This document shows, one piece after another, positions 26,908 through 63,383 of a stretch of 64,000 nt of DNA; position 1 is the first letter of the stretch; every line of letters begins with the position of its first letter. The notes beneath the pieces are model-generated. The model was not told the DNA's origin and searched no databases. It saw nothing but the letters and a program-made list of their open reading frames with translations. The position numbers and the translations under genes were made by a program. The stretch is from the IMG/VR virus record IMGVR_UViG_3300005537_000001, positions 304,055 to 368,054 of that record. The stretch is one strand, 5' to 3'.

Positions 26908-27561
26908 CTATTTTCCTATGCTCTTTTCAATCGCCTTGAATTCTGGATAATCATAACCATCGTCTCTGGCCATTTTGATGTACCCGCAAACCCTGTCAGT
27001 GTCATACCCATTCTTTAACAGTCGCAACAAATACTTTATTAATTTTTCCCTGTCACCAAAAGATATATCCACTAATGATGGGTGAATATAGGACCCCTTA
27101 GCCTCACCAAGTTTTCCGATGCTCTTTTCAATCGTTTTGAATTCTGGATAGTCGTACCCAGCATTCTTGCATTTTTCTATCCATTGCTCTACGTCGTTAG
27201 AAGATTGAGATGTTCCATGCTTGAGTCTATGCAAGCACAACCGAATAAATTTATCCTTGTCCTTGAACTTAACCAGCTTAAAACCACCAAAATCACCTAT
27301 TTTTATACCGTATTCTGACGTTCCCTCGGCTATTTTTCCGATGCTCTGCTCAATGGTCTTGAATTCTGAATAGTTATAACCGGCATTCTTGCACATCTTT
27401 ACCCAATATTGCACTTCACTTATACTTCCGGATCTTAATTCCTTTAGACATAGCTTGATGAATTTTTCATGATCTCGAAACCTAACTACACGTTCACCAC
27501 CCGGTTCATACACCGTGATGCCATCGTTATTTTTCTCTTGTAGAAGTTCAGCTAGCTTCAT
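26908..27561 (-). CDS. Three-repeat protein (GY.Y[PS]EFK.IE.SIGK) with class-I leader MKLAELLQE
   Basis: Three related helical units visible in the translation; AT-rich; inserted between gp25 and gp6. Confidence 0.75.
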   Translation of the reverse strand: MKLAELLQEKNNDGITVYEPGGERVVRFRDHEKFIKLCLKELRSGSISEVQYWVKMCKNAGYNYSEFKTIEQSIGKIAEGTSEYGIKIGDFGGFKLVKFKDKDKFIRLCLHRLKHGTSQSSNDVEQWIEKCKNAGYDYPEFKTIEKSIGKLGEAKGSYIHPSLVDISFGDREKLIKYLLRLLKNGYDTDRVCGYIKMARDDGYDYPEFKAIEKSIGK

Positions 27562-38576: not shown

Positions 38577-39320
38577 ATGGGCGGTATCTATTTTATTACA
38601 TGTAGCGTAAATGGAAAAATCTATGTTGGATCCGCTAAGGATTTGCATACTCGATGGGCTGAACATGTATCTCTTCTTAATCTACAGAAGCACTTCAATA
38701 GGAATCTTCAAAGAGCATGGTTGAAGTATGATAAAGATTCATTCACATATCGAATCCATGAACAGCTTGGTGAATACAATAAGAAGTTTTTCTTTGAAAG
38801 AGAAAACTTTTGGATGGATAAGCTAAGAGCTGAAGGAAAGCGATTATTCAACATAGCTAGAGCTCAGGGTGGCTGGGGTGAAGAAACAAAACTTCGTGTA
38901 ATGGAGATAGGCGCAAAGATAGGTGCCACACTTAGAAAAATGTATAATGCTATGTCTGATGAAGAGCGTAAGCAAAAATATGGGCATCGAAAAGATATCC
39001 CGTTATCTGAGGCACATAAAGTTCACCTAAGGAATTTTTGGAAAGATAAGCCAAAATCTGAAACTCATAAAGCAAATATGCGGATTGGTCAGCGGGAAAA
39101 TGTTTCTCCGGAAAGAAAGAAACAACGGAAAAAGAATATGTCGATAGTTGGGAAGAGTAGAAGAGGCTCAATCCCATCAAATGCGAAACCAATACTTTTT
39201 AGAGGTGTTGAATACTCATCAGCCCCAGAATGTAAAAGAAAAACTGGGTTCACAATGCATCAAATATTATTAGAAGTATATGGACCAAATTATAGAAAAA
39301 CCAAAAAAGAAGCGGCTTAA
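38577..39320 (+). mobile_element. Free-standing GIY-YIG homing endonuclease with NUMOD3-like repeats
   Basis: GIYFI......KIYVGS....RW..H...L....H.N..LQ.AW.KY; SE.HK repeats; AT-rich. Confidence 0.9.
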
Positions 39321-46813: not shown

Positions 46814-48448
46814 ATGGCATCTTGGGTAGATTATTGGCGAATCGTCACTCCCGCGTCGCGCAAGGCACAATATCAAAATCCTAACATCAACCTAGATGAT
46901 GGTATGGATCTCAATACAGCTGGGTACGCTTCATTCTCCACCGTAGCTTGGTTCTCGAACCTTCTCAAGGGAGCCACGGCCCGCCTGCAGCGCTACAAGC
47001 AGTACGATGCCATGGATTACGGTGACGTTGGTAGGGCCTTAGACATTATTTCTGAAGAACTTTCTAACGAGGACAAGCGCACCGGATTGCCGTTCATCAT
47101 TGATTATCAGACAGAAGAAAATCAACAGATTTCTGAAACTACGGTAACGACAGTTCGTGCCGCCCTGCGCCATTGGTCAAAATTTCACTCACTTGAAAAG
47201 CGCGTGTTTAACGTGGCGCGAGTGCTGTGCAAGTATGGTGATTGTTTTTTCCGCAAAACATCAGATACAAAGAAATGGGAATACGTAGATCCAACCCGCG
47301 TGATAGGTATTGAAATTAACGCTGAGGGTGAAAAGAAAGCATATCACATTCGTCCCTCCAGCTTCTCGAACTCAGTTGCCAGCGCCAAGGGAACAGCAAA
47401 GGGCGTAAGCTCATCGATGGAGTCAGTCGAAATTTCTCCAGCTTCAGCTATAATCCACTTCACGCTGTCGGACGACATGGGCGAGAGCGCGCCGTTTGGA
47501 TTGTCAATTCTTCAGGCAGCGTTTAAGGATTTCCAAAAGCTGACGATGCTGGAAGATGCGGCAATTATCTACCGCATAGTGAGAGCTCCAGAGCGCCGAG
47601 TATTCTACATTGACGTAGGCAACATGCCGCCGCAGCGCGTTAAGCAGTACATTGAGCAGGTGCGAAACGACATTAGGCAAAAGCGCCAGCCCAATACCGC
47701 CAACGCGAATCAAACTGATTCTCAGTACAACGCCGAAAGCATTCAAGAAGATTATTTCTTCCCAACGACCGCGAGTGGTCGCGGTAGCCGCGTTGAAACC
47801 CTCCCCGGCGGTGCAACGTGGGAAATTCCAGAGCTTGATTACTTCCTCAAGAAGGTGTTTAGAGCTCTCCGAGTACCTTCGTCGTACATGATTGGACAGG
47901 AGGCAGCCCCGCCGGGTGCGCAGTTCAACGACGGAAAGGTTGGCGTCGCTTACATGGAAGAGCGCATCTTCGCGAACTTCGTAATTCGCCTGCAGCAGTG
48001 CGTTGAGACAACCTTCGATGAGCAGTTTAAGACGTATCTCAAGGTAACTGGGATCAGCGTTGACCCTGAACTTTTCAAGCTTACGCTACCAGAACCACAG
48101 AACTTCGCTCTGTATCGTCAAGCCGCGCTTGACACCGATCTCATCGCGTCGTTCAAGGCGATTGAGGAAACCGGTTATCTTTCCAAGAGAATGATGATTG
48201 AGCGCTTCCTCGGACTTACCAAGGATGACATCGCGGCAAATGAGGTACAGATTAGACAGGAACGTGGCATCAAGGATGGTCTAAACATAGATGTCATACA
48301 GCAGATCTATGACCCAGCCGTTTATGAAAATCGCGACAAGCTTAAGGTAGATGATTCCGGTGAAGCCCCGCCTCCAGAGGCTGGCGGTGAAGAGACACCA
48401 GCTCCAGAAGCCGGAGGCGGTGAAACTCCAGAGACACCAGCAGCTTAA
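46814..48448 (+). CDS. Portal vertex protein gp20
   Basis: RY.QYD.MD; PFG.SIL; LEDA.IIYRI.RAPERRVFYIDVGNMPP; EDYFFP; GRGSRVETLPGG; ALRVPSSY. Confidence 0.95.
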   Translation: MASWVDYWRIVTPASRKAQYQNPNINLDDGMDLNTAGYASFSTVAWFSNLLKGATARLQRYKQYDAMDYGDVGRALDIISEELSNEDKRTGLPFIIDYQTEENQQISETTVTTVRAALRHWSKFHSLEKRVFNVARVLCKYGDCFFRKTSDTKKWEYVDPTRVIGIEINAEGEKKAYHIRPSSFSNSVASAKGTAKGVSSSMESVEISPASAIIHFTLSDDMGESAPFGLSILQAAFKDFQKLTMLEDAAIIYRIVRAPERRVFYIDVGNMPPQRVKQYIEQVRNDIRQKRQPNTANANQTDSQYNAESIQEDYFFPTTASGRGSRVETLPGGATWEIPELDYFLKKVFRALRVPSSYMIGQEAAPPGAQFNDGKVGVAYMEERIFANFVIRLQQCVETTFDEQFKTYLKVTGISVDPELFKLTLPEPQNFALYRQAALDTDLIASFKAIEETGYLSKRMMIERFLGLTKDDIAANEVQIRQERGIKDGLNIDVIQQIYDPAVYENRDKLKVDDSGEAPPPEAGGEETPAPEAGGGETPETPAA

Positions 48449-49197: not shown

Positions 49198-49240
49198 ATC
49201 TGTGAATTCAATGTGTTCAGGTTATCTGACGGGAGACTCT

Positions 49241-49858
49241 ATGTCAAAGCTTATTCCTCTGTATGAGTATTTCAACCCAGTTGAAGCTCAATTGGTTGAG
49301 TCTCGGGACGCGCAGAAGAATCTTTATCTAGCTGGTAGAATGATGGCGGGTGAGGCAAAGAACCTCAACAACCGCAGCTATCCAGTTACCGAAATTGCTA
49401 AGGCGGTTGGTCTCATCAACCAACGAATTAAGGAAGGTGCCTTCATCGCTGGTGAGCTGAATCACCCAGACAACCTTTCAATCGATCTAAAGAATGTTTC
49501 ACACATCATCATCGAAGCATGGATGGATGGAAACAACGCCGTCGGTAAGTGCAGAATTTTGAACACCCCATCTGGACAAATAGTTCAGAGCCTCATTGAG
49601 GGTGGAATGAAGCTTGGAGTTTCTTCGCGTGGAACTGGAAACGTAAACCACAACGGCATAGTTGAGGATTTTTCGTTCGTAACGCTCGACATCGTAGCCC
49701 AACCATCCGGTCCAGGCTGCTACCCAGATGTAGTTCGTGAAGGTTTGGAACAGCCAAAGATTCGCACCCTCGCCGAAATGGCGGTGGAAGATGTCAAGGC
49801 GCAAAAATTCTTGACGCGTGAAGTGTTCAAGTTCATCGCATCACTGACGAAGAAGTAA
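49241..49858 (+). CDS. Prohead core protease gp21
   Basis: N.N.R.YP, GELNHP (His), VSH.I, IL.TP.G, LGVSSRG.G (Ser), D.VA.PS; ATG 49241 has a GGGAG SD. Confidence 0.93.
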   Translation: MSKLIPLYEYFNPVEAQLVESRDAQKNLYLAGRMMAGEAKNLNNRSYPVTEIAKAVGLINQRIKEGAFIAGELNHPDNLSIDLKNVSHIIIEAWMDGNNAVGKCRILNTPSGQIVQSLIEGGMKLGVSSRGTGNVNHNGIVEDFSFVTLDIVAQPSGPGCYPDVVREGLEQPKIRTLAEMAVEDVKAQKFLTREVFKFIASLTKK

Positions 49859-52309: not shown

Positions 52310-52594
52310 GTGGATGAATCTCGCCTCAAGAGACTCGCTGGTATTTTAACCGAAGAGGCCGATAAGAAGGTAATTCCTATCGGCCTCCACTTCGGTCTTG
52401 GCGACGGAGGCAACATGCACAAGGCGGTCGACGCGCTGCTTGAAGCTGGAATTGAAGTGGACATGAATTATTCGATGGGTGTTTATTATTTCAACTTCAA
52501 GAGTGAAAAGCTTGCCGATGAAGCTCACAGGATTGTAGCTAAAGTTATCGATAAGAAAAAAGAGCAGAAGTGGAGCGAAAATGCTAGTACGTGA
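52310..52594 (+). CDS. Small protein with LAG tag; paralogue of the next gene
   Basis: GTG start; RLKRLAGILTE; HFG...KA..AL..A.[IV]E.D....G..YF.F. Confidence 0.7.
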   Translation: MDESRLKRLAGILTEEADKKVIPIGLHFGLGDGGNMHKAVDALLEAGIEVDMNYSMGVYYFNFKSEKLADEAHRIVAKVIDKKKEQKWSENAST

Positions 52595-52850: not shown

Positions 52851-53459
52851 ATGGATATTAGCAAGTTACGAAAATTAGCTGGAATGCCATCTGCCACGGT
52901 TAGCAAGAAGATACTAACTGAAGCTGCAGAGTCAAAGCGCGTAATCGTGCTAAATGGATCACTGCACCCACCTGGTAAATCCCACACACGAAAGATAGCT
53001 GAAAAATTTCTTAAGCTGATACCGAATTCAACCGGTGAAATAGTTGATTTGGTTGACTACGACATTAAGCCCGGTAACGGTGCTGATGCTGCTGATGATG
53101 ATTGGAAAACTATTCTACCAAAGATACTTGAGTGCGATGTTCTAGTATGGGCTACACCTCTCTGGTGGGGTAACCACTCATCGCTTATTCAACGAGCGAT
53201 CGAGAGAATGGATTCGCTAACCGACAAGAAGGGATTTCCGGTAACGATTAAGAATAAATTTGCCGCGATATTGATTAGCGGTGCCGATGATGGCGCTCAA
53301 TCAACTCAGGCGGGTTTGATGGAAGTATCTACCTATTTCGGATTTACACTTCCACCAGTGTGTGGATTTTATAGTTTGGAAAATGGTAAGTGGGATGATG
53401 AATCCGAAAAACAGTTGAAAATTACAGCTGATAATTTGGCGCAGGCTCTGTCTCGCTAA
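52851..53459 (+). CDS. Flavodoxin-like NAD(P)H-dependent FMN reductase with LAG tag
   Basis: VIVLNGS.....S.T; DDW..I..KILE.D.LV.ATP.WWG..SS.....IERMD; NK.A......DG. Confidence 0.85.
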   Translation: MDISKLRKLAGMPSATVSKKILTEAAESKRVIVLNGSLHPPGKSHTRKIAEKFLKLIPNSTGEIVDLVDYDIKPGNGADAADDDWKTILPKILECDVLVWATPLWWGNHSSLIQRAIERMDSLTDKKGFPVTIKNKFAAILISGADDGAQSTQAGLMEVSTYFGFTLPPVCGFYSLENGKWDDESEKQLKITADNLAQALSR

Positions 53460-53905: not shown

Positions 53906-54793
53906 ATGGATGAAATCCTACAGAAATTGCTAAGCTCTGAGCTACTCAGCGAAGAAGCCAAGGCAGAAATCTCCACTCAGTGGACTACCGCGGTTGAGTC
54001 TTACAAGACTACAGTTCGCGAGGAAGTAACACTCGAAGTGAGAAATGAAATTGCCGAACAGTGGGCAACTGAACGTGACGCTCTAGTTGAGAATGTCGAA
54101 ACGTTCGTTGCAAAGAAACTTGATGAAGAAATTGCAGAGCTAAAGTCAGACATTGAGCGCTTTCGCGACCTCGAGGCAGAATACGCCGAGAAGATCGTTG
54201 AAGAAAAGCACGCGATGGCCGAAACCCTCTCAGCAGAACTTGATGCGCTAGTTGAGAAAATGGATGCCTTCTTTGAGCTACGCCTCAGCGAAGAATTCCA
54301 AGAGCTCAAGGAAGATCTCCAGATCGTTCGCGAGAATGAATTCGGTCGTCAGATTTTCGAAGCCTACTCAACGACGTTCAACAAGAGCTTTGTTGATGAA
54401 GAGTCAACAGCCTCTAAGCTTGCAGCTGCAAACACAGAACTCGAAGAAGCTCAAAAGAAGATCAGCGCCCTTGAGGAATCAGGTGCGAAGATGGTTCGTG
54501 AAGCTAAGCTCGAAAAGATCCTTGCTCCTCTCAACGGTAAGAAGAAGGAACAGATGGCATTCGTACTTGCCAATGTTGAAACTTCCCGCCTTGAAGAAGC
54601 ATACAACCACTTCATTGGTCGCGTTCTGAAGGAAGAGCCTTCAGCGCAGCCTGGAAGCGATGCATCGCCAGCTCAGATCACTGAGTCAGCGTCCGTTGTA
54701 GTAACTGGCAATGAGTCTACCGAGACGCCAGCAAAGCCAGCAGTAGCCACCGACAAGTTTCGTGAACTCAAGAAACTTGCTGGCATTGCCTAG
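53906..54793 (+). CDS. Prohead scaffold protein gp22
   Basis: Acidic coiled coil, LSEE.K..I, N.FGR.IFEAY, C-terminal FRELKKLAGIA; directly upstream of the MCP. Confidence 0.85.
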   Translation: MDEILQKLLSSELLSEEAKAEISTQWTTAVESYKTTVREEVTLEVRNEIAEQWATERDALVENVETFVAKKLDEEIAELKSDIERFRDLEAEYAEKIVEEKHAMAETLSAELDALVEKMDAFFELRLSEEFQELKEDLQIVRENEFGRQIFEAYSTTFNKSFVDEESTASKLAAANTELEEAQKKISALEESGAKMVREAKLEKILAPLNGKKKEQMAFVLANVETSRLEEAYNHFIGRVLKEEPSAQPGSDASPAQITESASVVVTGNESTETPAKPAVATDKFRELKKLAGIA

Positions 54794-54818: not shown

Positions 54819-56087
54819 ATGGAACTATTTGAAAATTGGAGCGAAACCAAAGAGACACTTCTTGAAGGTCTCAGCGAAAGCAAGAAGAAGATTCTAGGCC
54901 CAGTCCTAGAGAACCAGATGGCTCACTTGCAGGAAACTGCAGCAGCTGGTACTTCCTCAGCAGGAGCTATTGGTAACTTCCAGAAGATCGTTATCCCAAT
55001 GATCCGCAGAATCATCCCAGGCACGATTGCAACCGAACTCGTTGGTGTACAGCCAATGGCCGGTCCAGTTGGCTTGGTCTACTCACTCCGCTTCTTGTTC
55101 TCAGAAGCAGTCACCGGTCCAGCAGCTACGGTTTCTGGTTTGGATGACAACTTCGTAACCAACCCAGGGGACGAAGTCTTCGCGAACAACTCTAAGACAA
55201 AGCGCTTCTATTCCACGTCTGACGCCCCAGCGGCTCCAGGTGGTCCAGCGGCTTCTACGTCTCAGGGCTTCGCGGCAACCACTTCTGATTACGAAGCCTT
55301 CGGCGGTCGTGCAATGACCTTGGAAGTCTTGAAGCAAACTGTAACCGCGGGTTCCCGTAAGTTGCAAGCTCGCTGGACTCCAGAAGCGATGCAGGATATC
55401 AAGGCCTCTCACGGCCTAGACCTCGAAGCAGAAATCACTGCTTCACTATCCGCTGCAGTCGTTTCCGAAATCGACAACGAAATCATCAACGACTTGATCG
55501 CTCTCGCGGGCACAACCCAGTCGTTCGATATGTCAGGTACCTTCACCGGTGTTCCTAACTACGTTGGCGATCGTCATGCAGTTCTTGGTGTGCTCATCAA
55601 CCAAGTTGCAAACGAAATTGCACGTAAGACGCGTCGCGGCCCAGCTAACTGGATCGTTGTTTCCCCACTCGTAGTTTCCGTTCTTCAGTCTGCCGCTAAG
55701 TCAGTCTTCGCGCCAGCCGTAAGCGGTTCCTTCGATGGTCCAAACAACACCAAGCTAGTTGGTACGTTGAACGGCTCAATCAAGGTATACACCTACATCT
55801 ACTTCGACGGATCACCACAGTCAATCGGTGGTTTGCCATCTGGTCAAGTAGAGCCAATCCTCCTTGGTTTCAAGGGTGGTTCAGGTGAAATGGACTCTGG
55901 CTACTTCTACTGCCCATACATCCCATTGATGTCAAGCGGTGTCGTAGTTGACCCAAATACTTTTAATCCACACGTATCGTTGATGACTCGTTACGGTAAG
56001 GCCACGTTCACCTCGACGGCAACGTCTCTTGGTAACTCGGCAGATTACTATGGCAGAATCAGCGTCGCTAACCTCTCATTCGTCTAA
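54819..56087 (+). CDS. Major capsid protein gp23
   Basis: LENQ; IP.IRR..P..IA.ELVGVQPM.GP.G; A.SRKL.ARWT.EA.QD....HGLD.E; YCPYIPL; TRYG. Confidence 0.97.
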   Translation: MELFENWSETKETLLEGLSESKKKILGPVLENQMAHLQETAAAGTSSAGAIGNFQKIVIPMIRRIIPGTIATELVGVQPMAGPVGLVYSLRFLFSEAVTGPAATVSGLDDNFVTNPGDEVFANNSKTKRFYSTSDAPAAPGGPAASTSQGFAATTSDYEAFGGRAMTLEVLKQTVTAGSRKLQARWTPEAMQDIKASHGLDLEAEITASLSAAVVSEIDNEIINDLIALAGTTQSFDMSGTFTGVPNYVGDRHAVLGVLINQVANEIARKTRRGPANWIVVSPLVVSVLQSAAKSVFAPAVSGSFDGPNNTKLVGTLNGSIKVYTYIYFDGSPQSIGGLPSGQVEPILLGFKGGSGEMDSGYFYCPYIPLMSSGVVVDPNTFNPHVSLMTRYGKATFTSTATSLGNSADYYGRISVANLSFV

Positions 56088-56527: not shown

Positions 56528-57088
56528 TTGATCAATCATGATTGGTATGTTTATCTTTGGATTGATCCCGCAAATAATATTCCACGTTATGTTGGTAAAG
56601 GTAGAAAAGGCAGAGCATTTGATCACATTGAAGCTGAATCACCTTATCGATACGCATGGATGTTAAAGAAGCGTCATCGCGAAGGATATGTTTGCTTACC
56701 ACGTATTGTTTGGGTGAATGGCGCAGTTGAAGCTAAAGAATTAGAAATTTTTCTCATAGCATGGATTGGACGTGAGGATAAAGGACTCGGGTCACTATGG
56801 AATAAAACAGACGGCGGTGAGGGCACTATTGGATTGTCACGCAAAATGATCGATGCGCGAAATAGGGCCATTGGAAATACCCAAAGAAACATTCCAAAAA
56901 CACCGCAACATATCGCAGCCCTCAAGCAGGGTCAGCGCAAAAGAACAGCTAGATCAGCAGCATTTATTGGAGTGTCATTAGATGAGTGGTATGCTATGCC
57001 ACGTAATGAACGTGTTCGTAGACGGAGAAAAATAGCTAAGACCATACCTCGCATTTTGCTCGCTGAGTGGGGCCGCTTTCTAGTTTGA
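56528..57088 (+). mobile_element. GIY-YIG (LEM-3-like subtype) homing endonuclease
   Basis: YVY...DP....RYVGKG...RA..H; A..LE..LI...GR....G.L.N.TDGGEG. Confidence 0.8.
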
Positions 57089-57189: not shown

Positions 57190-58089
57190 ATGAAAATTTT
57201 TACAAAAACCAAGTGCTGGATTTTACGAAAAGCACTAGAAAACAATCTTTTCACGGTGATGTTACCGCTGAAAGGTAAAATTAACAGTCTCCCCAAAAAG
57301 TGCTACAACATTTTTTCATATGCGGACCACGAGGGGTTAAAACGCTATCGTTTAGAATATGTTGCCGGAGATAAAATTCTAGCTAGACCATTTATCAAGC
57401 ATGAATCTACCACTGATTCATTACCAGAAACCGTTGAAATACATGCGTCTGACATTTTCAAAGGAAAATTGAGCATTCATGTATGGGCCAAAAACACCAA
57501 AGTTGAATGGCAAGAAGCTGATGATAACTTCTACCTTTTAGGGAATGATCGTCAATATACTAGCGTCTGGGATATTTTGATTTATGAGTGGTTGTTCGGT
57601 AGACTGCTTCACGACGCGTGGGAATGGTTTAAGCAAAAGTGGTTCAATTCCAGATTCAAAACTATCCAAGATCTACAAGAGGTCCGACGATCGTGCATAA
57701 ATGTGCTCATGTCAAAAAGTCCATTTAAAGCTGATGATGTTATGGAAAATCTATATGATATGTCTAAATTGAAGTGGATGAAGCTTTACAGATTACCGGA
57801 TGGTGGATATGGAAAAACAAAAAAGAAATTAAACATGTATCTGACAGATTTAGTTAATGGAGAAGAATTGCAACGTGGGCCAAATGATAGTTTTGTGCAA
57901 GGTAAAATTTTTGGAGTGTACGAAGATATCGACACCAAGGATCGCGAATACACATCTACTAGGAAGCTTACGTTGTTACTTTTGATTGCAACTTTAATTT
58001 CAGCTTTTGCTTCAGTTATTGAAATCGTGCATCATTGGGATAAGGTAATTTTGCTTTCTGATTTTTGGCTTAAACATCAAGGAGTATGA
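57190..58089 (+). CDS. AT-rich hypothetical protein with C-terminal TM helix
   Basis: LTLLLLIATLISAFASVIEIV near the C-terminus; followed by a terminator. Confidence 0.65.
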   Translation: MKIFTKTKCWILRKALENNLFTVMLPLKGKINSLPKKCYNIFSYADHEGLKRYRLEYVAGDKILARPFIKHESTTDSLPETVEIHASDIFKGKLSIHVWAKNTKVEWQEADDNFYLLGNDRQYTSVWDILIYEWLFGRLLHDAWEWFKQKWFNSRFKTIQDLQEVRRSCINVLMSKSPFKADDVMENLYDMSKLKWMKLYRLPDGGYGKTKKKLNMYLTDLVNGEELQRGPNDSFVQGKIFGVYEDIDTKDREYTSTRKLTLLLLIATLISAFASVIEIVHHWDKVILLSDFWLKHQGV

Positions 58090-58159
58090 AATTGGAACAT
58101 ACGCTCTCTAAGATATAAAGTTTGAGGCTGTCAAGCAGAAGGATCAAGTAAAACTCAAG

Positions 58160-58193
58160 AAGGGCAGGTGCTTAAACATCTGCCCTTTCTTTT
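58160..58193 (+). terminator. Rho-independent terminator
   Basis: AAGGGCAGGTG-CTTAAA-CATCTGCCCTT then TCTTTT. Confidence 0.75.
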
Positions 58194-58210
58194 GCTCCGG
58201 GTCTGGATGC

Positions 58211-58218
58211 ACTAAATA
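58211..58218 (+). promoter_or_regulatory. Late promoter variant ACTAAATA
   Basis: Between the terminator and the GGAG SD of 58239. Confidence 0.55.
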
Positions 58219-58238
58219 GTCTACCAGCTGGAGATAAC

Positions 58239-58808
58239 ATGCTAGTCCGTGAACTGCTTCAAGAAATAGAAAAATTGAACCTGCCAAAAGGTGATTACGC
58301 GCTAGATCAAGTAATGCGCGGCATGTTTGATACCTCAGCATACCGTCCGTACAAGAAGATAGGTTCTGCCGGTGGTTACGATTTTCTTATCTATCAGCAC
58401 ATAATCGGTAAGCTGAGCGACCTAATGGGCATCATCAAGCGCGGCAAGGAAATTGTTGGGTCGGTAGTTCTCAAGAAGCTGCCATCCAGCGAGGCTGGCA
58501 CCCACGCCTACGTTACCGACGCGGTACAGGTTAAGGAAGCTCACCGTGGAAAAAATCTCGGGGTTGAGCTTTATCGCAAGCTCATAAGCTACGGTCTTAT
58601 CTTGGTAAGTTCCGACAAGCAATCTGCTGGTGGTCAGGCGATCTGGAAAAAGCTGCTGCAGGACAAATCAATCAACGTAGAACGGTTCAACATGCATGAT
58701 GATTTTCACGGCAGGAAAAATTTCTCGAAGCCGGTAAAATCCCTTGCCGCGATGTATCATTCACCATTTAACTCGCAGTTTGACAAGCGCTTCGTAGCGT
58801 TCAAATAA
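58239..58808 (+). CDS. GNAT-family acetyltransferase with class-I leader MLVRELLQE
   Basis: V.V...HRGKNLG..LY acetyl-CoA motif; L.SS..QS.GG..IW..L. Confidence 0.8.
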   Translation: MLVRELLQEIEKLNLPKGDYALDQVMRGMFDTSAYRPYKKIGSAGGYDFLIYQHIIGKLSDLMGIIKRGKEIVGSVVLKKLPSSEAGTHAYVTDAVQVKEAHRGKNLGVELYRKLISYGLILVSSDKQSAGGQAIWKKLLQDKSINVERFNMHDDFHGRKNFSKPVKSLAAMYHSPFNSQFDKRFVAFK

Positions 58809-58818
58809 GGAATAATCT

Positions 58819-59148
58819 ATGCTTCTTGAAGAACTTAAATCGGGTGATACTGACACATACTTTCGAAATATGTTTCGTAGCCACATGAACGCGGATAAGA
58901 TCAAACAGATAGTGGACAAGTTAAGATCTGAAAATAAACTTGACAAGGGAAAGATAGTGAAGGGAATTCTGCATGCCATCAAGGATGACGGCGCCGCCAA
59001 TCTTTTTATCACGGTTGGCGAGGATAGATATCCATCTCTATTTTTGGGTACCTTAAAACGTATTAGGCGCGCGCTCGGTGATGATGATCCGGGTGAAGAG
59101 CTTGACGCTATCCAAAAATCATTGGAATACAACACGGATGAAAAATAA
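58819..59148 (+). CDS. Small protein with one degenerate copy of the ...E[LF].AI.KS repeat domain
   Basis: MLLEEL leader; DK.KIVK.IL..IKDD ... EELDAIQKSL. Confidence 0.65.
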   Translation: MLLEELKSGDTDTYFRNMFRSHMNADKIKQIVDKLRSENKLDKGKIVKGILHAIKDDGAANLFITVGEDRYPSLFLGTLKRIRRALGDDDPGEELDAIQKSLEYNTDEK

Positions 59149-59726
59149 TGAATAACTTTACAACAGCCCTAAATCACGTCATGCTCTACGAGGTTGGACC
59201 ATGGTTCAACACCAACGATCCAGACACTATCGCGGGCACCACCGGTACCCCCCAGCTCGACCGCAAGTGTGGCTTCGTGAACATCGCCGGCGACGCCGGT
59301 GGAGTAACGAAGTACGGAATAGCGTCAGCCGATAATCCAGGCGTCGACGTTGCTAACCTCACCCTCACCCAGGCATCCCAGATCTACCAGGAGAAGTATT
59401 GGCTAGCTGGGCACTGCGACAAGATCTCTAGCGGACCGGTCACCATCTTCCAGTTCGACATGATCGTGAACAACGGCGGTGGTCGCGCCGCCAAGATCCT
59501 GCAGCAGGCAGCTGGAGTCACGGTTGATGGTAGCATCGGTCCTGGCACCCTTGCCGCGGTAAACGCGCTCGATCCAGCTACCCTGATCAATTCCCTGTCA
59601 ACAATCCGCGCCGCCCGCTACAACGCGATCGCGCAGAACGACCCTTCCCAGGCTCGCTTTCTAGCTGGCTGGTTGCGCCGGTGCACAGAGGTTACCCAAT
59701 TTGCTTTAGCGCAGATTCAGCCATAA
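59148..59726 (+). CDS. Glycoside hydrolase family 108 endolysin with PG-binding C-terminus
   Basis: E.G...GFVN..GD.GG.TKYGI; LT..QA..IY...YW; FD..VN.G...A...LQ...GV..DG.IGP.TL; RF..GW.RR. Confidence 0.88.
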   Translation: MNNFTTALNHVMLYEVGPWFNTNDPDTIAGTTGTPQLDRKCGFVNIAGDAGGVTKYGIASADNPGVDVANLTLTQASQIYQEKYWLAGHCDKISSGPVTIFQFDMIVNNGGGRAAKILQQAAGVTVDGSIGPGTLAAVNALDPATLINSLSTIRAARYNAIAQNDPSQARFLAGWLRRCTEVTQFALAQIQP

Positions 59727-59729
59727 ATA
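59722..59729 (+). promoter_or_regulatory. Late promoter CATAAATA
   Basis: Overlaps the endolysin stop. Confidence 0.7.
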
Positions 59730-59750
59730 GAATATCAATTGGAGGCTTGA

Positions 59751-60032
59751 ATGCTTACGCGCGAATTGCTCAGTGAAAAGGTTGCACCGCTACCAGCTGG
59801 AATGTCCATTGAGGATTCATTCGTTGAGCTGCAGAAGCGGCTTGGTGCCGCCAAGGCAGCGTTTGGCATCATCAACAAGATCAAGGACAAGGAGCAGCGC
59901 AAGAAGCACTTTTCCTCCGTCACTGGAAACATGAACACGCTTCGAGCCCAGCTTTCAAGGCTTGACAAGCAGCTTAACGATTTTTACCGAGCCGAAAGAA
60001 GCTACGAGCGCGGTGAGCTTCACGCAGAATAA
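59751..60032 (+). CDS. Small helical protein with class-I leader MLTRELLSE
   Basis: GGAGG SD, late promoter. Confidence 0.7.
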   Translation: MLTRELLSEKVAPLPAGMSIEDSFVELQKRLGAAKAAFGIINKIKDKEQRKKHFSSVTGNMNTLRAQLSRLDKQLNDFYRAERSYERGELHAE

Positions 60033-60043
60033 CGGAGACAACC

Positions 60044-60631
60044 ATGTCAAATTTCAATGAATTACGCAAGCTAGCTGGCATTCCCATCATTGTGGAAGAT
60101 CAACCATATACCAACGCCGAAGCTCCACAGCGTGAGATACGAGAGCCAAAAGTTGGACCAGATGGTTTGTTTGTTCAACCACGAGATTTTAGCGCGGCTC
60201 GAGAAATTCTTGAGGTAGAAAACCGCACCCGCTTTGCCGGTCACTTCAAGTTTGCCGACATGTACACCGGGCAAACTCGTACCTACGATGAGCTTGGACG
60301 CTACAACTGTGGTCGCTGCAACCAGTACCAAGATCCAGGCGATCAGTGCCTGCTCTTGAAGATTAAGAAGGTTGATCATCAAGCTGGAAGCTGCGGTGAC
60401 TGGGAAAATATCTGCGCCGGCGATCCAGAGATGCTCCTCCATCTCAAGAGCGTCGAGTCAGCTGGATATGGCGTTGCCAAGAATGGCATCGGCTTTGGCT
60501 GCCTCCGCTGTCCATACGCATCGGCGGCGTACAAGCCAGACAGTCGCGGCCGCGATCTCTACTGCGGTAAGGGCGACTTCAGAACGTTTTCCACCGCGTG
60601 CTGCGGGTTGAACGGCGCGCCGACAGTATGA
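60044..60631 (+). CDS. Cys-rich protein (two HiPIP-like/metal-binding units) with LAG tag
   Basis: NELRKLAGI; CGRC.QY....QC......V....GSC..W; CLRC.YA...YC.......ACC. Confidence 0.6.
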   Translation: MSNFNELRKLAGIPIIVEDQPYTNAEAPQREIREPKVGPDGLFVQPRDFSAAREILEVENRTRFAGHFKFADMYTGQTRTYDELGRYNCGRCNQYQDPGDQCLLLKIKKVDHQAGSCGDWENICAGDPEMLLHLKSVESAGYGVAKNGIGFGCLRCPYASAAYKPDSRGRDLYCGKGDFRTFSTACCGLNGAPTV

Positions 60632-60735
60632 GCGATTGGCTTCGCTACCGGCTTGCGTGGATATGTCCGAGGTGCGGGAAGGCGCAGTGGATTTGGAGCC
60701 TACATCTACGCTGTCCGGCAGATAAGGATAAATAG
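60628..60735 (+). CDS. Possible 35-aa Cys/Trp-rich peptide
   Basis: ATGA-coupled; MSDWLRYRLAWICPRCGKAQWIWSLHLRCPADKDK. Confidence 0.35.
   Translation: MSDWLRYRLAWICPRCGKAQWIWSLHLRCPADKDK
60727..60734 (+). promoter_or_regulatory. Late promoter GATAAATA
   Basis: Upstream of the AGGAG SD of 60762. Confidence 0.7.
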
Positions 60736-60761
60736 CAAGTCTTTCAACAGGAGTACCTGCT

Positions 60762-61529
60762 ATGACCCATTCATACTATCACGCACCGCGCACCTTCAAG
60801 GTCGTGCGCAGCGTTCCAGATCCTAGCGTACAAAATTTCCTATCAATATCAAAACCAGTAGCTCTTCCAGCGGCTGTAGATCTTCGCCCTAGCTGCCCAC
60901 CGGTATATGATCAGGGCGATCTTGGCTCATGCACCGGCAACGCGATCGCGGCGGCGATTGAATTTGATCTCATGAAGCAGGGAAAATCACCCATCGCACC
61001 GTCACGCCTGTTCATCTACTACAACGAGCGCCTGATGGAAGGTGACGTTGGCGAGGATGCCGGCGCCCAAATTCACGACGGCATCAAGTGCATCGCCACC
61101 TACGGTGTTTGCGCCGAAGCTCTATGGCCATACAACCCAGCTGCATTTACCGTAAAGCCGAGCGCTGAAGCTTATGCCGCCGCGGCAGCTGAAAAGGCGC
61201 TGAGCTATTACGCGCTCGACATCACCGTTGACGCAATGAAGCAGGCGCTTGCCCAAGGCTATCCGATCGTTATTGGGATGCAGGTATTTGGAGAGATGGA
61301 AAGTGAATACGTAGCAAAAACCGGCCACGTTTCAATGCCATCAAATCCAAGCGACAGCCTTGGTGGTCACTGCGTGCTAGTAGTTGGGTATGATGACTCG
61401 AAGCAGTGCCTGATAGTGCGCAACAGCTGGGGTGCCGATTGGGGCATCGGCGGGTACTTTACCCTGCCGTATGCGTACGTAACTCCTGAGCTGATGACCG
61501 ATTTTTGGGTTATTACCGCGGTAGCATGA
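60762..61529 (+). CDS. Papain-like C1 cysteine peptidase
   Basis: LP..VDLR; DQG.LGSCT (Gln, Cys); SRLFIYY; GGHCV (His); RNSWG..WG..GY (Asn). Confidence 0.92.
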   Translation: MTHSYYHAPRTFKVVRSVPDPSVQNFLSISKPVALPAAVDLRPSCPPVYDQGDLGSCTGNAIAAAIEFDLMKQGKSPIAPSRLFIYYNERLMEGDVGEDAGAQIHDGIKCIATYGVCAEALWPYNPAAFTVKPSAEAYAAAAAEKALSYYALDITVDAMKQALAQGYPIVIGMQVFGEMESEYVAKTGHVSMPSNPSDSLGGHCVLVVGYDDSKQCLIVRNSWGADWGIGGYFTLPYAYVTPELMTDFWVITAVA

Positions 61530-62389
61530 TGAAGCTTGTAGCTGAACTTTCTAGGTTGATTCCACGCGGCCTCCTGCAGGAGGCCGATTTGTCTGGTGAG
61601 AGGGATTCTGCTGGAAAATTCACGAGAGTTGCGCGCGGCAGGCTTATTGGAAGGTTTGCTCAAGGATTTAGCCTACAGCAAATTCACAGCATGATGAAGG
61701 TTAAGAAATTAGATAGCGCGGAGCAAGATGACATCTATGACGAGATTCTAGCTGAAAAGGATGTCGTCATTAAGCGCGCGCTGCACTACCTGAAGGATGA
61801 TGATGTCGCGGCGCTAAAGCAGCTGATATTTTACGCTAAAAAGTTTGGGCATTATTACCCAGAATTCAAGGCGATAGAAAAGAGCATGGGAGTACAAGAA
61901 GGTTCCTCGCAGCGCGCGTTCTCAGCTGGATATGGTGACGATGAAAACATTCAATTTGTAAATCGACGCCGTGGAAAGAAGGTTGTAAAGAGCGTCATCG
62001 TGAAGGAAGAGAAGCTCACCTTTACCGCGCAGGAACTAACGCTAGATAGCCTACGCAGTCAAGGAGATTTGGTGGTATTAGTAATGAGCGATTTAGATAT
62101 TGGTGACTATTACGGCATTTCCGTAATATTTAGGCGCAATGGTAAAATTGAATCCTCGATTGGAGATGCTGCTGCAAAGGCTGAATGGAAGAAATACAAA
62201 AATGAAATTATCAAAACAGCACTCGATTTTCTGCACATTGGCAACAAAGAAAAGCTTCTCAAGGACATCCTAACCGATTACAAAGACGATCTTATCTATC
62301 TTGTAAAAGCGCTCATAAACCTTTCGCGAAAACAAGGTTTTGACTACCCTGAATTCAAGGCAATTGAGAAGAGTTTAAAAGCAAAGTAA
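61526..62389 (+). CDS. Multi-segment protein with two YPEFKAIEKS repeat domains
   Basis: ATGA-coupled to the peptidase; GHYYPEFKAIEKSM and GFDYPEFKAIEKSL; LQE and VQE junctions. Confidence 0.7.
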   Translation: MMKLVAELSRLIPRGLLQEADLSGERDSAGKFTRVARGRLIGRFAQGFSLQQIHSMMKVKKLDSAEQDDIYDEILAEKDVVIKRALHYLKDDDVAALKQLIFYAKKFGHYYPEFKAIEKSMGVQEGSSQRAFSAGYGDDENIQFVNRRRGKKVVKSVIVKEEKLTFTAQELTLDSLRSQGDLVVLVMSDLDIGDYYGISVIFRRNGKIESSIGDAAAKAEWKKYKNEIIKTALDFLHIGNKEKLLKDILTDYKDDLIYLVKALINLSRKQGFDYPEFKAIEKSLKAK

Positions 62390-62438
62390 CCTGATTAAGA
62401 ACCTGGTAAATATAGCATGATCCACAGTAGGGCGTATC

Positions 62439-62693
62439 ATGCTATCAATCTTCAAGCGCAAACCAAAACAAATACAGGATAATCATATGGAATATTTCTC
62501 TCAAGAATTTCTCGATCAGCTTATCAACGAGCACAAGCTTGTTAACGCGTCAATTCACCAGCTTACAGACCGCTACAAGCAGTACGTTCAAGCTCACAGC
62601 CCAGATGCTCTTACCGCTGCCCTCACAACTCTCCGCGGCAAGAAGGTAGAGCTTGAGGCGAAGATAGATGTTTTATCGGAATATTTGAAATAA
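62439..62693 (+). CDS. Hypothetical coiled-coil protein (alternative start 62487)
   Basis: ORF track; GGTAAATA box at 62405-62412. Confidence 0.55.
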   Translation: MLSIFKRKPKQIQDNHMEYFSQEFLDQLINEHKLVNASIHQLTDRYKQYVQAHSPDALTAALTTLRGKKVELEAKIDVLSEYLK

Positions 62694-63383
62694 ATGCTAA
62701 AATGGTATGTTTATCTGTGGAGGGATCCACAAGATAATATTCCACGCTATGTTGGCAAGGGTCAAGAAAATAGAGTTTGGGATCATATTCAAAAATCTTC
62801 TGCAACCTATTATTCGCGTCTACTAAAGAAAAGATACAGGGACGGATATATCTGTCTACCTCAATTGATATGGGTGAATACGGAAAAAGAAGCTTATGAA
62901 CTCGAGACACTCCTCATTCAAACAATTGGTAGAAAAGATCGGGGTGAAGGTCCCCTTCTTAATAATACCGATGGTGGCGGTTCACTTAATCCATCTCCCG
63001 AAACTAAATTGCTAATAGCTGAGAGGGCTCGCATAAGCACGAAAATTTCATGGACCATTCCTGTTATCAGAGAAAAACGAACAGCATCTCTGCGTTTAGC
63101 AGCTTCAGATCCAGAAGTTCAGCGTAAAAAGGGAAATTCCCTAAAAATAACGTTATCTACACCAGAAGCTAAACTCAAAAGAAGTGCTACTATTAGAGAG
63201 ATGCTTTCTAGACCAGAGGTGCAGACCAAACGAAGTGCATCTATTAAATTAGCATTTTCTCATGAAGAAACTAAAGCGAAAAGATCAGCTTATCTTACAT
63301 TACCTGCTTCTTGCATCGTATGTCGTAAAACAACCTCTGTTGCAGGCGTGAACGCACATTTTAAGTGCCACCCTAAATCATGA
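62694..63383 (+). mobile_element. GIY-YIG (LEM-3-like subtype) homing endonuclease, paralogue of 56528-57088
   Basis: WYVYLW.DP..NIPRYVGKG; L.N.TDGG; about 16-aa PE...KRS repeats; C-terminal CIVC...H..C. Confidence 0.8.

What the first reader, a model, noticed from the sequence alone, without database searches (positions are those of the whole stretch)
58819..62389. The same repeat domain recurs in two distant genes fused to different partners
Seen: 61526-62389 has two copies (EKDVVIKRALHYLKDD...GHYYPEFKAIEKSM; NKEKLLKDILTDYKDD...GFDYPEFKAIEKSL) with LQE, VQE and VKE junctions. 58819-59148 has a degenerate copy (DKGKIVKGILHAIKDD...EELDAIQKSL). That makes six copies in three genes in this window, each closing a segment, more than 30 kb apart. 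Inference: an expanding shuffled family, either a third C-terminal targeting/anchor module or a diversifying effector. The conserved DNA (e.g. TACCC[AT]GAATTCAAGGC) could promote recombination.
Basis: partly seen in the sequence, partly recalled or inferred. Interest (0 to 1): 0.6.

Follow-up and report, generated by a model that had tools for sequence, protein, structure and literature searches.

The report
Repeated helical module in phage head cargo
A previously unnamed 50-residue three-helix protein module is repeated 15 times in 12 genes of this 368-kb soil jumbo phage, mostly in late proteins that look as if they are loaded into the capsid and cut into pieces by the head protease; it is real, but its function is still only inferred.

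Summary
Window 61526-62389 encodes two full copies of a ~50-aa domain, and 58819-59148 encodes one divergent copy with a loop insertion. 26908-27561 (- strand) encodes three more. A profile links the divergent copy end to end (E 4e-7), not only over the 10-aa core.

The window belongs to a complete 368-kb jumbo phage with a T4-type portal, gp21-type prohead protease and gp23-type capsid protein. Genome-wide the domain occurs 15 times in 12 genes. Outside it matches 462 protein clusters from metagenomes, mostly multi-copy, but none of nine cultured jumbo relatives, no Pfam or PHROG family and no PDB sequence. AlphaFold gives a confident three-helix bundle with only generic TPR/PPR-like neighbours.

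Half of the family genes start with a T4 capsid-targeting-like N-terminus (M-K/L-x-x-E-L-L-x-E). Domains are followed by [LIVM]-x-E-[AGS] seven times more often than background. Several of the genes lie in operons headed by a T4-late-like ATAAATA motif.

Best reading (inferred, about 0.5): these are prohead-core cargo polyproteins cut by the head protease into small helical proteins. Domain position differs between orthologues, so shuffling is real. DNA identity between copies is at most 61%, so recent recombination is unsupported.

The parts
61526..62389 (+). P0002 gene (287 aa). It has a conserved N-terminal propeptide-like segment, two domain copies and a beta-rich middle segment. Its start overlaps the stop of the upstream C1 peptidase gene (ATGA).
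61526..61582 (+). P0002 N-terminus, aa 1-19, ending in LLQE. The motif KLIPRG-x-L-x-E is invariant in orthologues P0016 and P0038. Putative targeting segment plus protease site.
61754..61891 (+). Domain copy 1 of P0002 (aa 77-122).
   Evidence: AF2 model pLDDT 92
61892..61900 (+). VQE, followed by G. Putative prohead-protease site. [VIM]-x-E-[GAS] is kept at this place in three orthologues despite linker divergence.
61997..62008 (+). IVKE, conserved in P0002, P0016 and P0038. Second putative site.
62243..62380 (+). Domain copy 2 of P0002 (aa 240-285), at the C-terminus.
58819..59148 (+). P0003 gene (109 aa). It lies directly downstream of the GNAT-like gene and overlaps the start of the GH108 lysozyme gene by one base.
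58942..59127 (+). Divergent domain copy of P0003 (aa 42-103), with an insertion between helices 1 and 2.
26908..27561 (-). P0001 gene (217 aa). The N-terminus MKLAELLQE is followed by three units, each a beta-hairpin plus the domain. It lies between the gp25-like and gp6-like baseplate genes and overlaps the gp25-like gene by 4 nt.
27337..27474 (-). P0001 domain copy 1 (aa 30-75), followed by IAE (27325-27333).
27115..27261 (-). P0001 domain copy 2 (aa 101-149), followed by LGE (27103-27111).
26914..27054 (-). P0001 domain copy 3 (aa 170-216), C-terminal.
49202..49858 (+). Prohead protease, T4 gp21 family (Peptidase_S77). The enzyme proposed to cut at the L/I/V-x-E sites.
60762..61529 (+). Papain-family (Peptidase_C1) gene, headed by an ATAAATA motif and translationally coupled to P0002. 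The same pair is found on L025.
58239..58808 (+). GNAT-like gene with N-terminus MLVRELLQE and an upstream CTAAATA motif. It heads the operon that contains P0003.
54819..56087 (+). Major capsid protein (Gp23 family). LQE followed by TAA at aa 37-42 aligns with IAE followed by TAA in RsoM2USA, and is the likely maturation site.

Best explanation
The repeat is a genuine, so far unnamed protein domain of about 50 residues: a three-helix bundle with consensus D-K-x-x-I-I-K-x-x-L ... K ... G-x-x-[YW]-P-E-[FL]-x-x-I-E-K-S-[IL].

The host genome is a jumbo phage with a T4-type head. Here the domain is carried mainly by late-operon genes whose products begin with an N-terminus resembling the T4 capsid-targeting sequence (M-K/L-x-x-E-L-L-x-E).

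My reading is that P0001, P0002 and probably P0003 are prohead-core cargo proteins. The N-terminal segment takes them into the assembling prohead. The gp21-type protease (window 49202-49858) then cuts after L/I/V-x-E, both at the N-terminus and in the disordered linkers behind each domain. One translation product would thus yield several small, mostly basic helical proteins of 7-14 kDa that stay in the head with the DNA and may be ejected into the host. In this reading the domain is the protease-resistant unit of a cassette (short beta segment, then domain, then cleavable linker) that has been duplicated in tandem and moved between genes.

Shown here:
- the domain family and its copy number;
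- the fold;
- the presence of the protease;
- the enrichment of the N-terminal motif and of the site motif;
- the late-promoter-like motifs;
- the different domain positions in orthologues.

Inferred:
- packaging into the head;
- cleavage at these sites;
- what the domain binds.
For: Family
- Seed HMM i-Evalues are 1e-26 to 1e-30 for the seed copies themselves. The non-seed copies in other genes score i-Evalues of 5e-14 to 9e-9 with the seed HMM, and 12 genes are found after iteration.
- 462 outside clusters match at E<=1e-3 and 191 at E<=1e-10. The 151 proteins analysed (the listed hits plus this window's three) carry 1-11 copies each.

Head type
- Portal_T4, Peptidase_S77 and Gp23 are all present in the window.
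- gp21 cuts after L/I-X-E, and a 10-residue N-terminal CTS loads T4 internal proteins (PMC9026906).

N-terminal motif
- It is present in 6 of 12 family genes against 27 of 522 other genes (Fisher p 2.5e-5).
- It is present in 42 of 151 outside homologues against 29 of 2505 raw ORFs.
- The same motif starts genes between portal and capsid protein (48485 and 49860), where T4 has its core proteins.

Site motif
- [LIVM]xE[AGS] lies within 15 aa behind 40% of 485 internal domains, against 5.8% of background windows. In close relatives the figures are 74% against 10%.
- The site is kept in P0002 orthologues although the linkers diverge.
- In the P0001 model the sites fall in the low-confidence linkers at residues 79-100 and 151-167.

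Late expression
- ATAAATA lies 25-45 nt upstream of the genes that head the operons of P0001, P0002, P0003 and genome 144543.

Partner
- One family member fuses the domain to an SLT transglycosylase that matches 'internal virion protein with endolysin domain'.
Against: - There is no protein-level evidence at all. No cultured relative carries the domain, so no virion proteome applies.
- L-x-E is a short motif, and the linkers are rich in E.
- P0001 lies in the baseplate module, between the gp25-like and gp6-like genes, here and on L023.
- One family member is the gp55-like late sigma factor, which is not expected in capsids.
- Four internal domain copies in this genome (genome 144543, 152564, 193465 and 238760) have no L/I/V-x-E behind them.
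- P0003 and P0002 fit the N-terminal motif only loosely.
Confidence: 0.5

Rival explanations
1. The domain is a partner-binding (protein-protein) or nucleic-acid-binding module of regulatory proteins that act in the infected cell, not in the capsid. The N-terminal motif and the L-x-E motifs would then be incidental features of helical, charged proteins.
For: - The gp55-like late sigma factor (genome 177100-177594) carries the domain where relatives have an unrelated C-terminal region.
- Most copies are basic.
- Nearest shapes are TPR/PPR-like hairpins, typical interaction modules.
- There are weak sub-threshold hits to HTH_36 and RepB_C.
Against: - The N-terminal motif and the site motif are both strongly enriched.
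- Family genes sit in late operons with structural and lytic genes.
- P0001-type proteins are only arrays of the domain with cleavable-looking linkers, an odd design for a regulator.
- No HTH or sigma region 4 family matched any of the 15 copies at E<=1, or the 69 homologues at E<=0.001, beyond one sub-threshold HTH_36 hit.
Confidence: 0.2
2. One reading: the domain itself is the anchor or address. It would bind the scaffold, shell or DNA, holding each released fragment inside the head or taking partners into it.
For: - 11 of 15 copies end a protein or precede a putative site, so most predicted fragments would end in the domain.
- Domain-bearing genes are translationally coupled to enzymes that lack an N-terminal motif of their own (C1 peptidase and GH108).
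Against: - P0001 has nothing to anchor but further copies of the domain.
- In the SLT fusion the putative site would separate the enzyme from the domain.
- The co-fold of the C1 peptidase with P0002 gave no verdict.
- The sigma-factor copy has no capsid context.
Confidence: 0.15
3. P0001 and its relatives are baseplate or tail assembly accessories, as their position between the gp25-like and gp6-like genes suggests. The other family members would have unrelated roles.
For: The same gp25-like neighbour is seen here and on contig L023, and the gene downstream here is gp6-like.
Against: - Gene position is weak evidence in T4-like phages, where internal-protein genes lie outside the head cluster (my knowledge).
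- P0001 has the clearest CTS-like N-terminus and the clearest sites of the family.
Confidence: 0.1
4. Chance similarity, low-complexity sequence or an assembly artefact.
For: None found.
Against: - Profile E-values reach 1e-30 within the genome and 1e-104 outside it.
- The fold prediction is confident.
- A second assembly agrees.
Confidence: 0.01

Closest known systems
T4 internal proteins IPI, IPII, IPIII and Alt (capsid-targeting sequence plus gp21 processing)
   Same: - A T4-type head module with a gp21-family protease.
- A short N-terminal hydrophobic/acidic segment ending in L/I-x-E.
- Small, mostly basic products.
- Genes scattered outside the head cluster, variable between relatives.
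   Different: - No sequence similarity to the T4 proteins.
- The cargo here is a repeated folded module, delivered partly as tandem polyproteins with internal sites.
- Packaging and cleavage are not demonstrated.
T4 prohead core proteins gp22, gp67 and gp68 (cut into several fragments by gp21)
   Same: There are multiple internal L/I-x-E sites in one product. Genes with the same N-terminal motif lie between portal and capsid protein in this window.
   Different: The T4 core fragments are mostly unstructured peptides that leave the head. Here each predicted fragment contains a confidently folded three-helix domain.
Processed head and inner-body paralogue families of phiKZ, 201phi2-1 and SPN3US
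   Same: These are jumbo phages with many paralogous head-internal proteins trimmed after glutamate by a gp21-related protease.
   Different: The capsid lineage and the site motif differ (S/A-x-E against L/I/V-x-E). No homology was detected, and the domain is absent from all GenBank phage records searched.
TPR/PPR-type helical hairpin repeats
   Same: They are the nearest shapes to the model (VIA Z 6-7, rmsd 1.4-2.4 over 47-49 residues; Atlas TM 0.6-0.7). In large homologues the domain recurs many times in all-helical proteins.
   Different: The scores are in the range expected for any small helical bundle. No TPR or PPR Pfam family matches. In P0001 the copies are separated by disordered linkers and do not form a solenoid.
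C-terminal region of T4-type late sigma factor gp55 / sigma-70 region 4
   Same: One family member is a gp55-like sigma region 2 protein, with the domain in the place of the C-terminal partner-binding region.
   Different: The C-terminal regions of the XacN1 and cyanophage gp55 homologues do not align with the domain. No Sigma70_r4 match was found. The helix 2 to helix 3 connection is longer than in a classical helix-turn-helix.

Membership tests
T4-type capsid-targeted, gp21-processed internal head proteins | The phage encodes a gp21-family (Peptidase_S77) prohead protease together with T4-type portal and capsid proteins. | tested here: met
   PF03420 at E 2e-23, PF07230 at E 1.5e-82 and PF07068 at E 2e-93.
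T4-type capsid-targeted, gp21-processed internal head proteins | An N-terminal segment of about 10 residues that ends in L/I-x-E. | tested here: inconclusive
   - P0001 fits: MKLAELLQE.
- P0002 has LLQE at residues 16-19, after a longer conserved segment.
- P0003 (MLLEELKSG) fits poorly.
- The motif is enriched in the family (6/12 against 27/522, p 2.5e-5).
- It is a resemblance to the T4 CTS, not a shown function.
T4-type capsid-targeted, gp21-processed internal head proteins | The protein is present in virions in cleaved form. | not testable with these tools
   No cultured phage carries the domain. Only one DNA run holds the sequence.
T4-type capsid-targeted, gp21-processed internal head proteins | Sequence homology to IPI, IPII, IPIII or Alt. 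| tested here: not met
   There is no PHROG family for P0001, P0002 or P0003. Pfam gives only a sub-threshold RepB_C hit for P0002. tblastn against 50,697 phage records finds nothing.
Sigma-70 region 4 / helix-turn-helix DNA-binding domains | A match to an HTH or Sigma70_r4 profile, or an HTH fold among the best structural neighbours. | tested here: not met
   - The only hit is one sub-threshold HTH_36 match (E 0.08, 13 bits against a cut-off of 25) among the 15 copies.
- None of the 69 homologues matched.
- The structural neighbours are TPR/PPR-like.
RepB_C (PF21861) | Score at or above the Pfam gathering cut-off of 27.3 bits. | tested here: not met
   This genome's best scores are 15.5-21 bits. 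Two of 69 outside homologues, including P0016, do match (best E 1.8e-9). A distant relationship is therefore possible but not established.
TPR / PPR repeats | A match to a TPR or PPR profile, and structural similarity clearly above the background for helical proteins. | tested here: inconclusive
   No Pfam TPR or PPR match was found. The best Z is 6.9, below the level the tool gives as meaningful for helical bundles.

The most novel reading that the evidence does not exclude
The module is a mobile 'cargo cassette' that uncultured huge phages multiply in tandem, so that each capsid-targeting signal loads many copies of one small protein. Because the same module replaces the partner-binding C-terminus of this phage's own late sigma factor, the packaged copies could be injected take-over factors. 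They would engage the same partner (RNA polymerase or the sliding clamp) at the very start of infection.
Probability: 0.08. Interest if true: 0.8.

Novelty: new variant of a known kind. Interest (0 to 1): 0.55.

Why it matters
Internal head proteins are how T4-like phages deliver proteins ahead of their DNA, and they include anti-restriction and host take-over factors. Outside T4 and the phiKZ group they are almost unknown.

If this reading is right, it defines a widespread, unannotated domain family: 462 clusters, up to 11 copies per protein, on contigs up to 493 kb. The family would mark capsid cargo in uncultured huge phages. It would also show a polyprotein way of raising cargo copy number.

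The finding also gives a testable set of about 30 candidate packaged proteins in one genome. Among them are enzymes (GNAT, FMN reductase, SLT) that carry head-type N-termini.

If the reading is wrong, what remains is still a new, confidently folded domain that moves between phage genes.

Tried and rejected
Family and sequence searches
- Pfam and PHROGs on the three proteins and on nine other family members gave no family for the domain.
- PDB sequence profiles from A1 and A3 gave nothing better than E 0.009, to designed repeats.
- The search for homologous proteins with P0001 found six proteins, none named.

Fold searches
- Foldseek against PDB and BFVD found nothing at E<=0.001.
- VIA wide and Atlas gave only generic TPR/PPR-like hairpins.
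- The ESM Atlas search with P0002 gave no usable hit.

Searches in cultured phages
- tblastn of P0001 and of the 7-copy homologue P0012 against 50,697 phage records found no match.
- The domain profile found nothing in RsoM2USA, XacN1, PA5oct, Xoo-sp13, RAS14, Vibrio 2.275.O, Phosso, Atu_ph07 or SCTP-2. In the second of the two runs the own genome, added as positive control, gave 16 matches.

Locus and context searches
With A4 it found one locus.
- A degenerate DNA pattern found two IMG/VR contigs.
- The 493-kb contig that carries P0007 is not held, so its head type could not be checked.
- P0016 has no contig on record.

Complex prediction
- Complex prediction of the C1 peptidase with P0002 gave no verdict (score 0.00). 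This is no evidence either way.

Reads
- Only one DNA run holds the sequence, probably the source sample, and no RNA run does.

Other
- No alternative genetic code was used or needed.
- Rejected idea: that the copies are kept alike by recent recombination. Nucleotide identity is at most 61%.


Full report
**Observation**

- Window 61526-62389 (+) encodes a 287-aa protein (P0002) with two copies of a roughly 50-aa unit ending in Y-P-E-F-K-A-I-E-K-S.
- 58819-59148 (+) encodes a 109-aa protein (P0003) with a divergent copy.
- 26908-27561 (-) encodes a 217-aa protein (P0001) with three copies.

An HMM built from the five clear copies scores them at i-Evalues of 1e-26 to 1e-30, as expected for its own seeds. 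P0003 is weak against that seed (E 0.0055, in pieces). Against the genome-iterated HMM it reaches a full-sequence E of 2e-6. Against a 140-sequence profile it matches in one stretch over positions 8-58 of 60 (E 4e-7). In the multiple alignment it aligns over all three helices, with an insertion in the first loop that two other members also have.

The junction motifs (LLQE19, VQE125 and IVKE161 in P0002; LQE9, IAE79 and LGE153 in P0001) and all coordinates were checked by translation. A second assembly of the same soil run covers 58800-62400 without a difference.

**Where it lies**

The window is the last 64 kb of a complete 368,054-bp virus record with direct terminal repeats. The only run that holds it is a soil metagenome.

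The window carries a T4-type head module:
- portal, 46814-48448;
- gp21-family prohead protease, 49202-49858;
- Gp23-family capsid protein, 54819-56087.

It also carries a baseplate module. P0001 sits there between a gp25-like gene and a 1402-aa gp6-like gene.

By capsid protein the nearest cultured phages are Ralstonia phage RsoM2USA (61%), Xanthomonas phage XacN1 (55%), Xoo-sp13, Stenotrophomonas RAS14 and CM1, and more distantly PA5oct.

**Size of the family**

In the whole genome the profile finds 15 copies in 12 genes. Besides the three window genes these lie at genome 58982, 144543, 152564, 177100, 191342, 193465, 194727, 206870 (-) and 238760.

Two members have recognisable partner domains:
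- a gp55-like late sigma factor (Sigma70_r2, phrog_234) that ends in the domain;
- a protein that joins the domain to an SLT lytic transglycosylase, matching 'internal virion protein with endolysin domain'.

Against 1.84 billion representative proteins, the 15-copy profile finds 462 clusters at E<=1e-3 and 191 at E<=1e-10. Most are multi-copy. Local re-scoring finds up to 11 copies, in a 2070-aa protein on a 493-kb contig.

None of these has a name or a Pfam family, apart from a marginal RepB_C hit in two of 69. The domain is absent at BLAST level from 50,697 GenBank phage records. It is absent at profile level from nine cultured jumbo relatives; in the second of the two runs the own genome was added as positive control and gave 16 matches. 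It is thus an unannotated family of uncultured, largely huge, phages.

**Fold**

With the 140-sequence alignment, AlphaFold2 gives a mean pLDDT of 92. The model has a short N-terminal helix and three helices at residues 9-21, 25-37 and 43-52.

In the whole-protein model of P0001 the three units are separate bundles, each preceded by a short beta-hairpin. They are joined by low-confidence linkers at residues 79-100 and 151-167.

Structure searches give no specific relative. Foldseek finds nothing in PDB or BFVD. The exhaustive aligner and the Atlas return TPR/PPR-like hairpins at Z 6-7 and TM 0.6-0.7, a level the tools themselves call unspecific for helical bundles.

Most copies are basic: pI is 8-9.9 for 9 of 15.

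**Architecture that points to the capsid**

1. *N-terminal motif.* Many family proteins begin M-K/L-x-x-E-L-L-x-E/A, for example MKLAELLQE, MKIYELLEA, MKVNELLEA and MLVSELLYE.
   - From my own knowledge, the T4 capsid-targeting sequence of IPIII is MKTYQEFIAE.
   - The review PMC9026906 states that the first ten residues of IPIII suffice for packaging, and that gp21 cuts after L/I-X-E.
   - In a crude gene set of 534 genes the motif starts 6 of 12 family genes and 27 of 522 others (Fisher p 2.5e-5).
   - The others include the genes right after the portal and the protease (48485, 49860), a GNAT-like gene (58239) and small genes at 52581 and 59751. These sit where T4 has its core proteins.
   - Among outside homologues 42 of 151 start this way, against 29 of 2505 raw ORFs of this genome.
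2. *Site motif.* Behind the conserved serine of the domain, [LIVM]-x-E-[AGS] occurs within 15 residues in 40% of 485 internal domains, against 5.8% of equal windows in the same proteins. In the close relatives of P0001 and P0002 the figures are 74% against 10%.
   - In the three P0002 orthologues (41-42% identical) the linker sequences differ, but [VIM]-x-E-[GAS] after domain 1, the I-V-K-E, and the N-terminal K-L-I-P-R-G-x-L-x-E are kept.
   - In this genome 11 of 15 copies either end the protein or precede such a site.
3. *Capsid protein.* It has LQE followed by TAA at residues 37-42. This aligns with IAE followed by TAA in RsoM2USA, as expected for a maturation site.
4. *Late-type promoter motif.* A T4-late-like ATAAATA lies 25-45 nt upstream of about 60 genes. 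These include the genes that head the operons of P0001 (gp25-like), P0002 (C1 peptidase), P0003 (GNAT) and genome 144543.

All four points are indirect.

**Shuffling**

- The orthologue of genome 193465-194730 on contig L027, and three further representatives, have the domain at the C-terminus. In this phage it lies mid-protein.
- The paralogues at 144543 and 152564 share their other segments but have the domain at different places.
- P0038 has the beta-rich segment before its first domain, where P0002 has an unrelated segment.
- The sigma-factor copy replaces a C-terminal region that is unrelated in XacN1 and cyanophage homologues.

The module has therefore moved. The moves are old. Copies share at most 61% nucleotide identity (median 43%), and third-codon identity in conserved residues is about 50%. 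By inspection of the codon listing it is also the longest exact match, and it uses codons that are among the commoner ones in this genome. I see no sign of recent recombination between copies.

**Most likely mechanism**

The family proteins of this window are prohead-core cargo. They would be loaded by the N-terminal segment and cut by the gp21-type protease at the N-terminus and behind each domain.
- P0001 would give three small helical proteins.
- P0002 would give two domain-bearing fragments and a short peptide.

I put this at about 0.5. What the domain then does is open. The candidates are binding DNA (basic, small), binding a protein partner (hairpin-like fold, sigma-factor context), or simply being a stable, protease-resistant unit.

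**Rivals**

- A regulatory interaction module with no capsid role (0.2).
- A baseplate accessory role for P0001 (0.1).
- Chance (below 0.01).

**Comparison with what is known**

It works like the T4 internal proteins and core proteins, which are targeted, then cleaved after glutamate. It also resembles the processed head paralogue families of phiKZ-type phages. It is not a sequence member of any of them.

Membership in the sigma region 4, HTH, RepB_C, TPR and PPR families was tested. It was not met for the first three and is inconclusive for TPR and PPR.

The new elements are the domain itself, its tandem polyprotein form with a site after each unit, and its movement between genes.

**What did not work**

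- The co-fold of the C1 peptidase with P0002 gave no verdict. The pair was chosen because it is translationally coupled here and on L025.
- No RNA run holds the sequence.
- The 493-kb contig could not be searched for its protease.

Noticed in passing
window 50636, 50969, 52310, 52851 and 60044 (N-termini), and 54770-54793 (C-terminus of the gene 53906-54793): A second signature, L-[KR]-x-L-A-G-[ILMV], occurs in only 6 of 534 genes of the whole genome, and all six are in the head module. In five it is near the N-terminus, followed by I/L-[TV]-E. In the sixth it forms the very C-terminus of the scaffold-like protein just upstream of the capsid gene. RsoM2USA ORF380 has it too. It looks like another head-assembly address or interaction tag.
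   Followed up: partly
window 52851-53459 and 58239-58808: Two enzymes carry head-type N-termini: an NADPH-dependent FMN reductase (with the LAG motif) and a GNAT-like acetyltransferase (MLVRELLQE). Both lie in or beside the head module. They may be packaged enzymes.
   Followed up: no
genome 177100-177594 (outside the window; locus L012): The gp55-like late sigma factor (Sigma70_r2, phrog_234) ends in a copy of the domain. Homologues in XacN1 and a cyanophage have unrelated C-terminal regions.
   Followed up: partly
genome 188357-195713 and 144543-153238 (outside the window): These are clusters of consecutive genes that all start with the CTS-like motif. Several carry the domain, and the last gene of the first cluster carries an SLT transglycosylase. 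In all, about 30 genes of the genome start this way.
   Followed up: partly
whole genome; in the window e.g. upstream of 48485, 49202, 58239, 59751, 60762, 63429 and 27929 (-): An ATAAATA motif, like the T4 late promoter TATAAATA, lies 25-45 nt upstream of about 60 gene starts. TATAAATA itself occurs 13 times on the + strand and once on the - strand.
   Followed up: partly
window 62694-63383 and 38577-39320; also 56528-57088: The first two ORFs are GIY-YIG homing-endonuclease-like. 56528-57088 looks by eye like a paralogue of 62694 but has no Pfam hit. The ORFs at 56528 and 62694 bracket the variable block 57190-62693 between the capsid gene and the neck-like gene.
   Followed up: partly
window 60762-62389 and locus L025 356-2085: The papain-family peptidase gene and the P0002-type gene overlap (stop on start) in both phages. 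This is a conserved, translationally coupled pair of unknown meaning.
   Followed up: partly
window 59148-59726: A GH108 lysozyme with a PG_binding_3 domain starts one base inside the stop codon of P0003.
   Followed up: no
genome 238529-238657 (- strand, outside the window): A weak 16th profile match (E 1.5e-4) lies on the strand opposite to the family gene 238760-239638. It could be a decayed copy or a chance match.
   Followed up: no
window 1441-8337, 13498-22416 and 22698-26906 (- strand): Three very large structural genes of 2298, 2972 and 1402 aa. The last is gp6-like. The 2972-aa protein has repeated Ig-like or decoration-like segments according to PHROGs.
   Followed up: no
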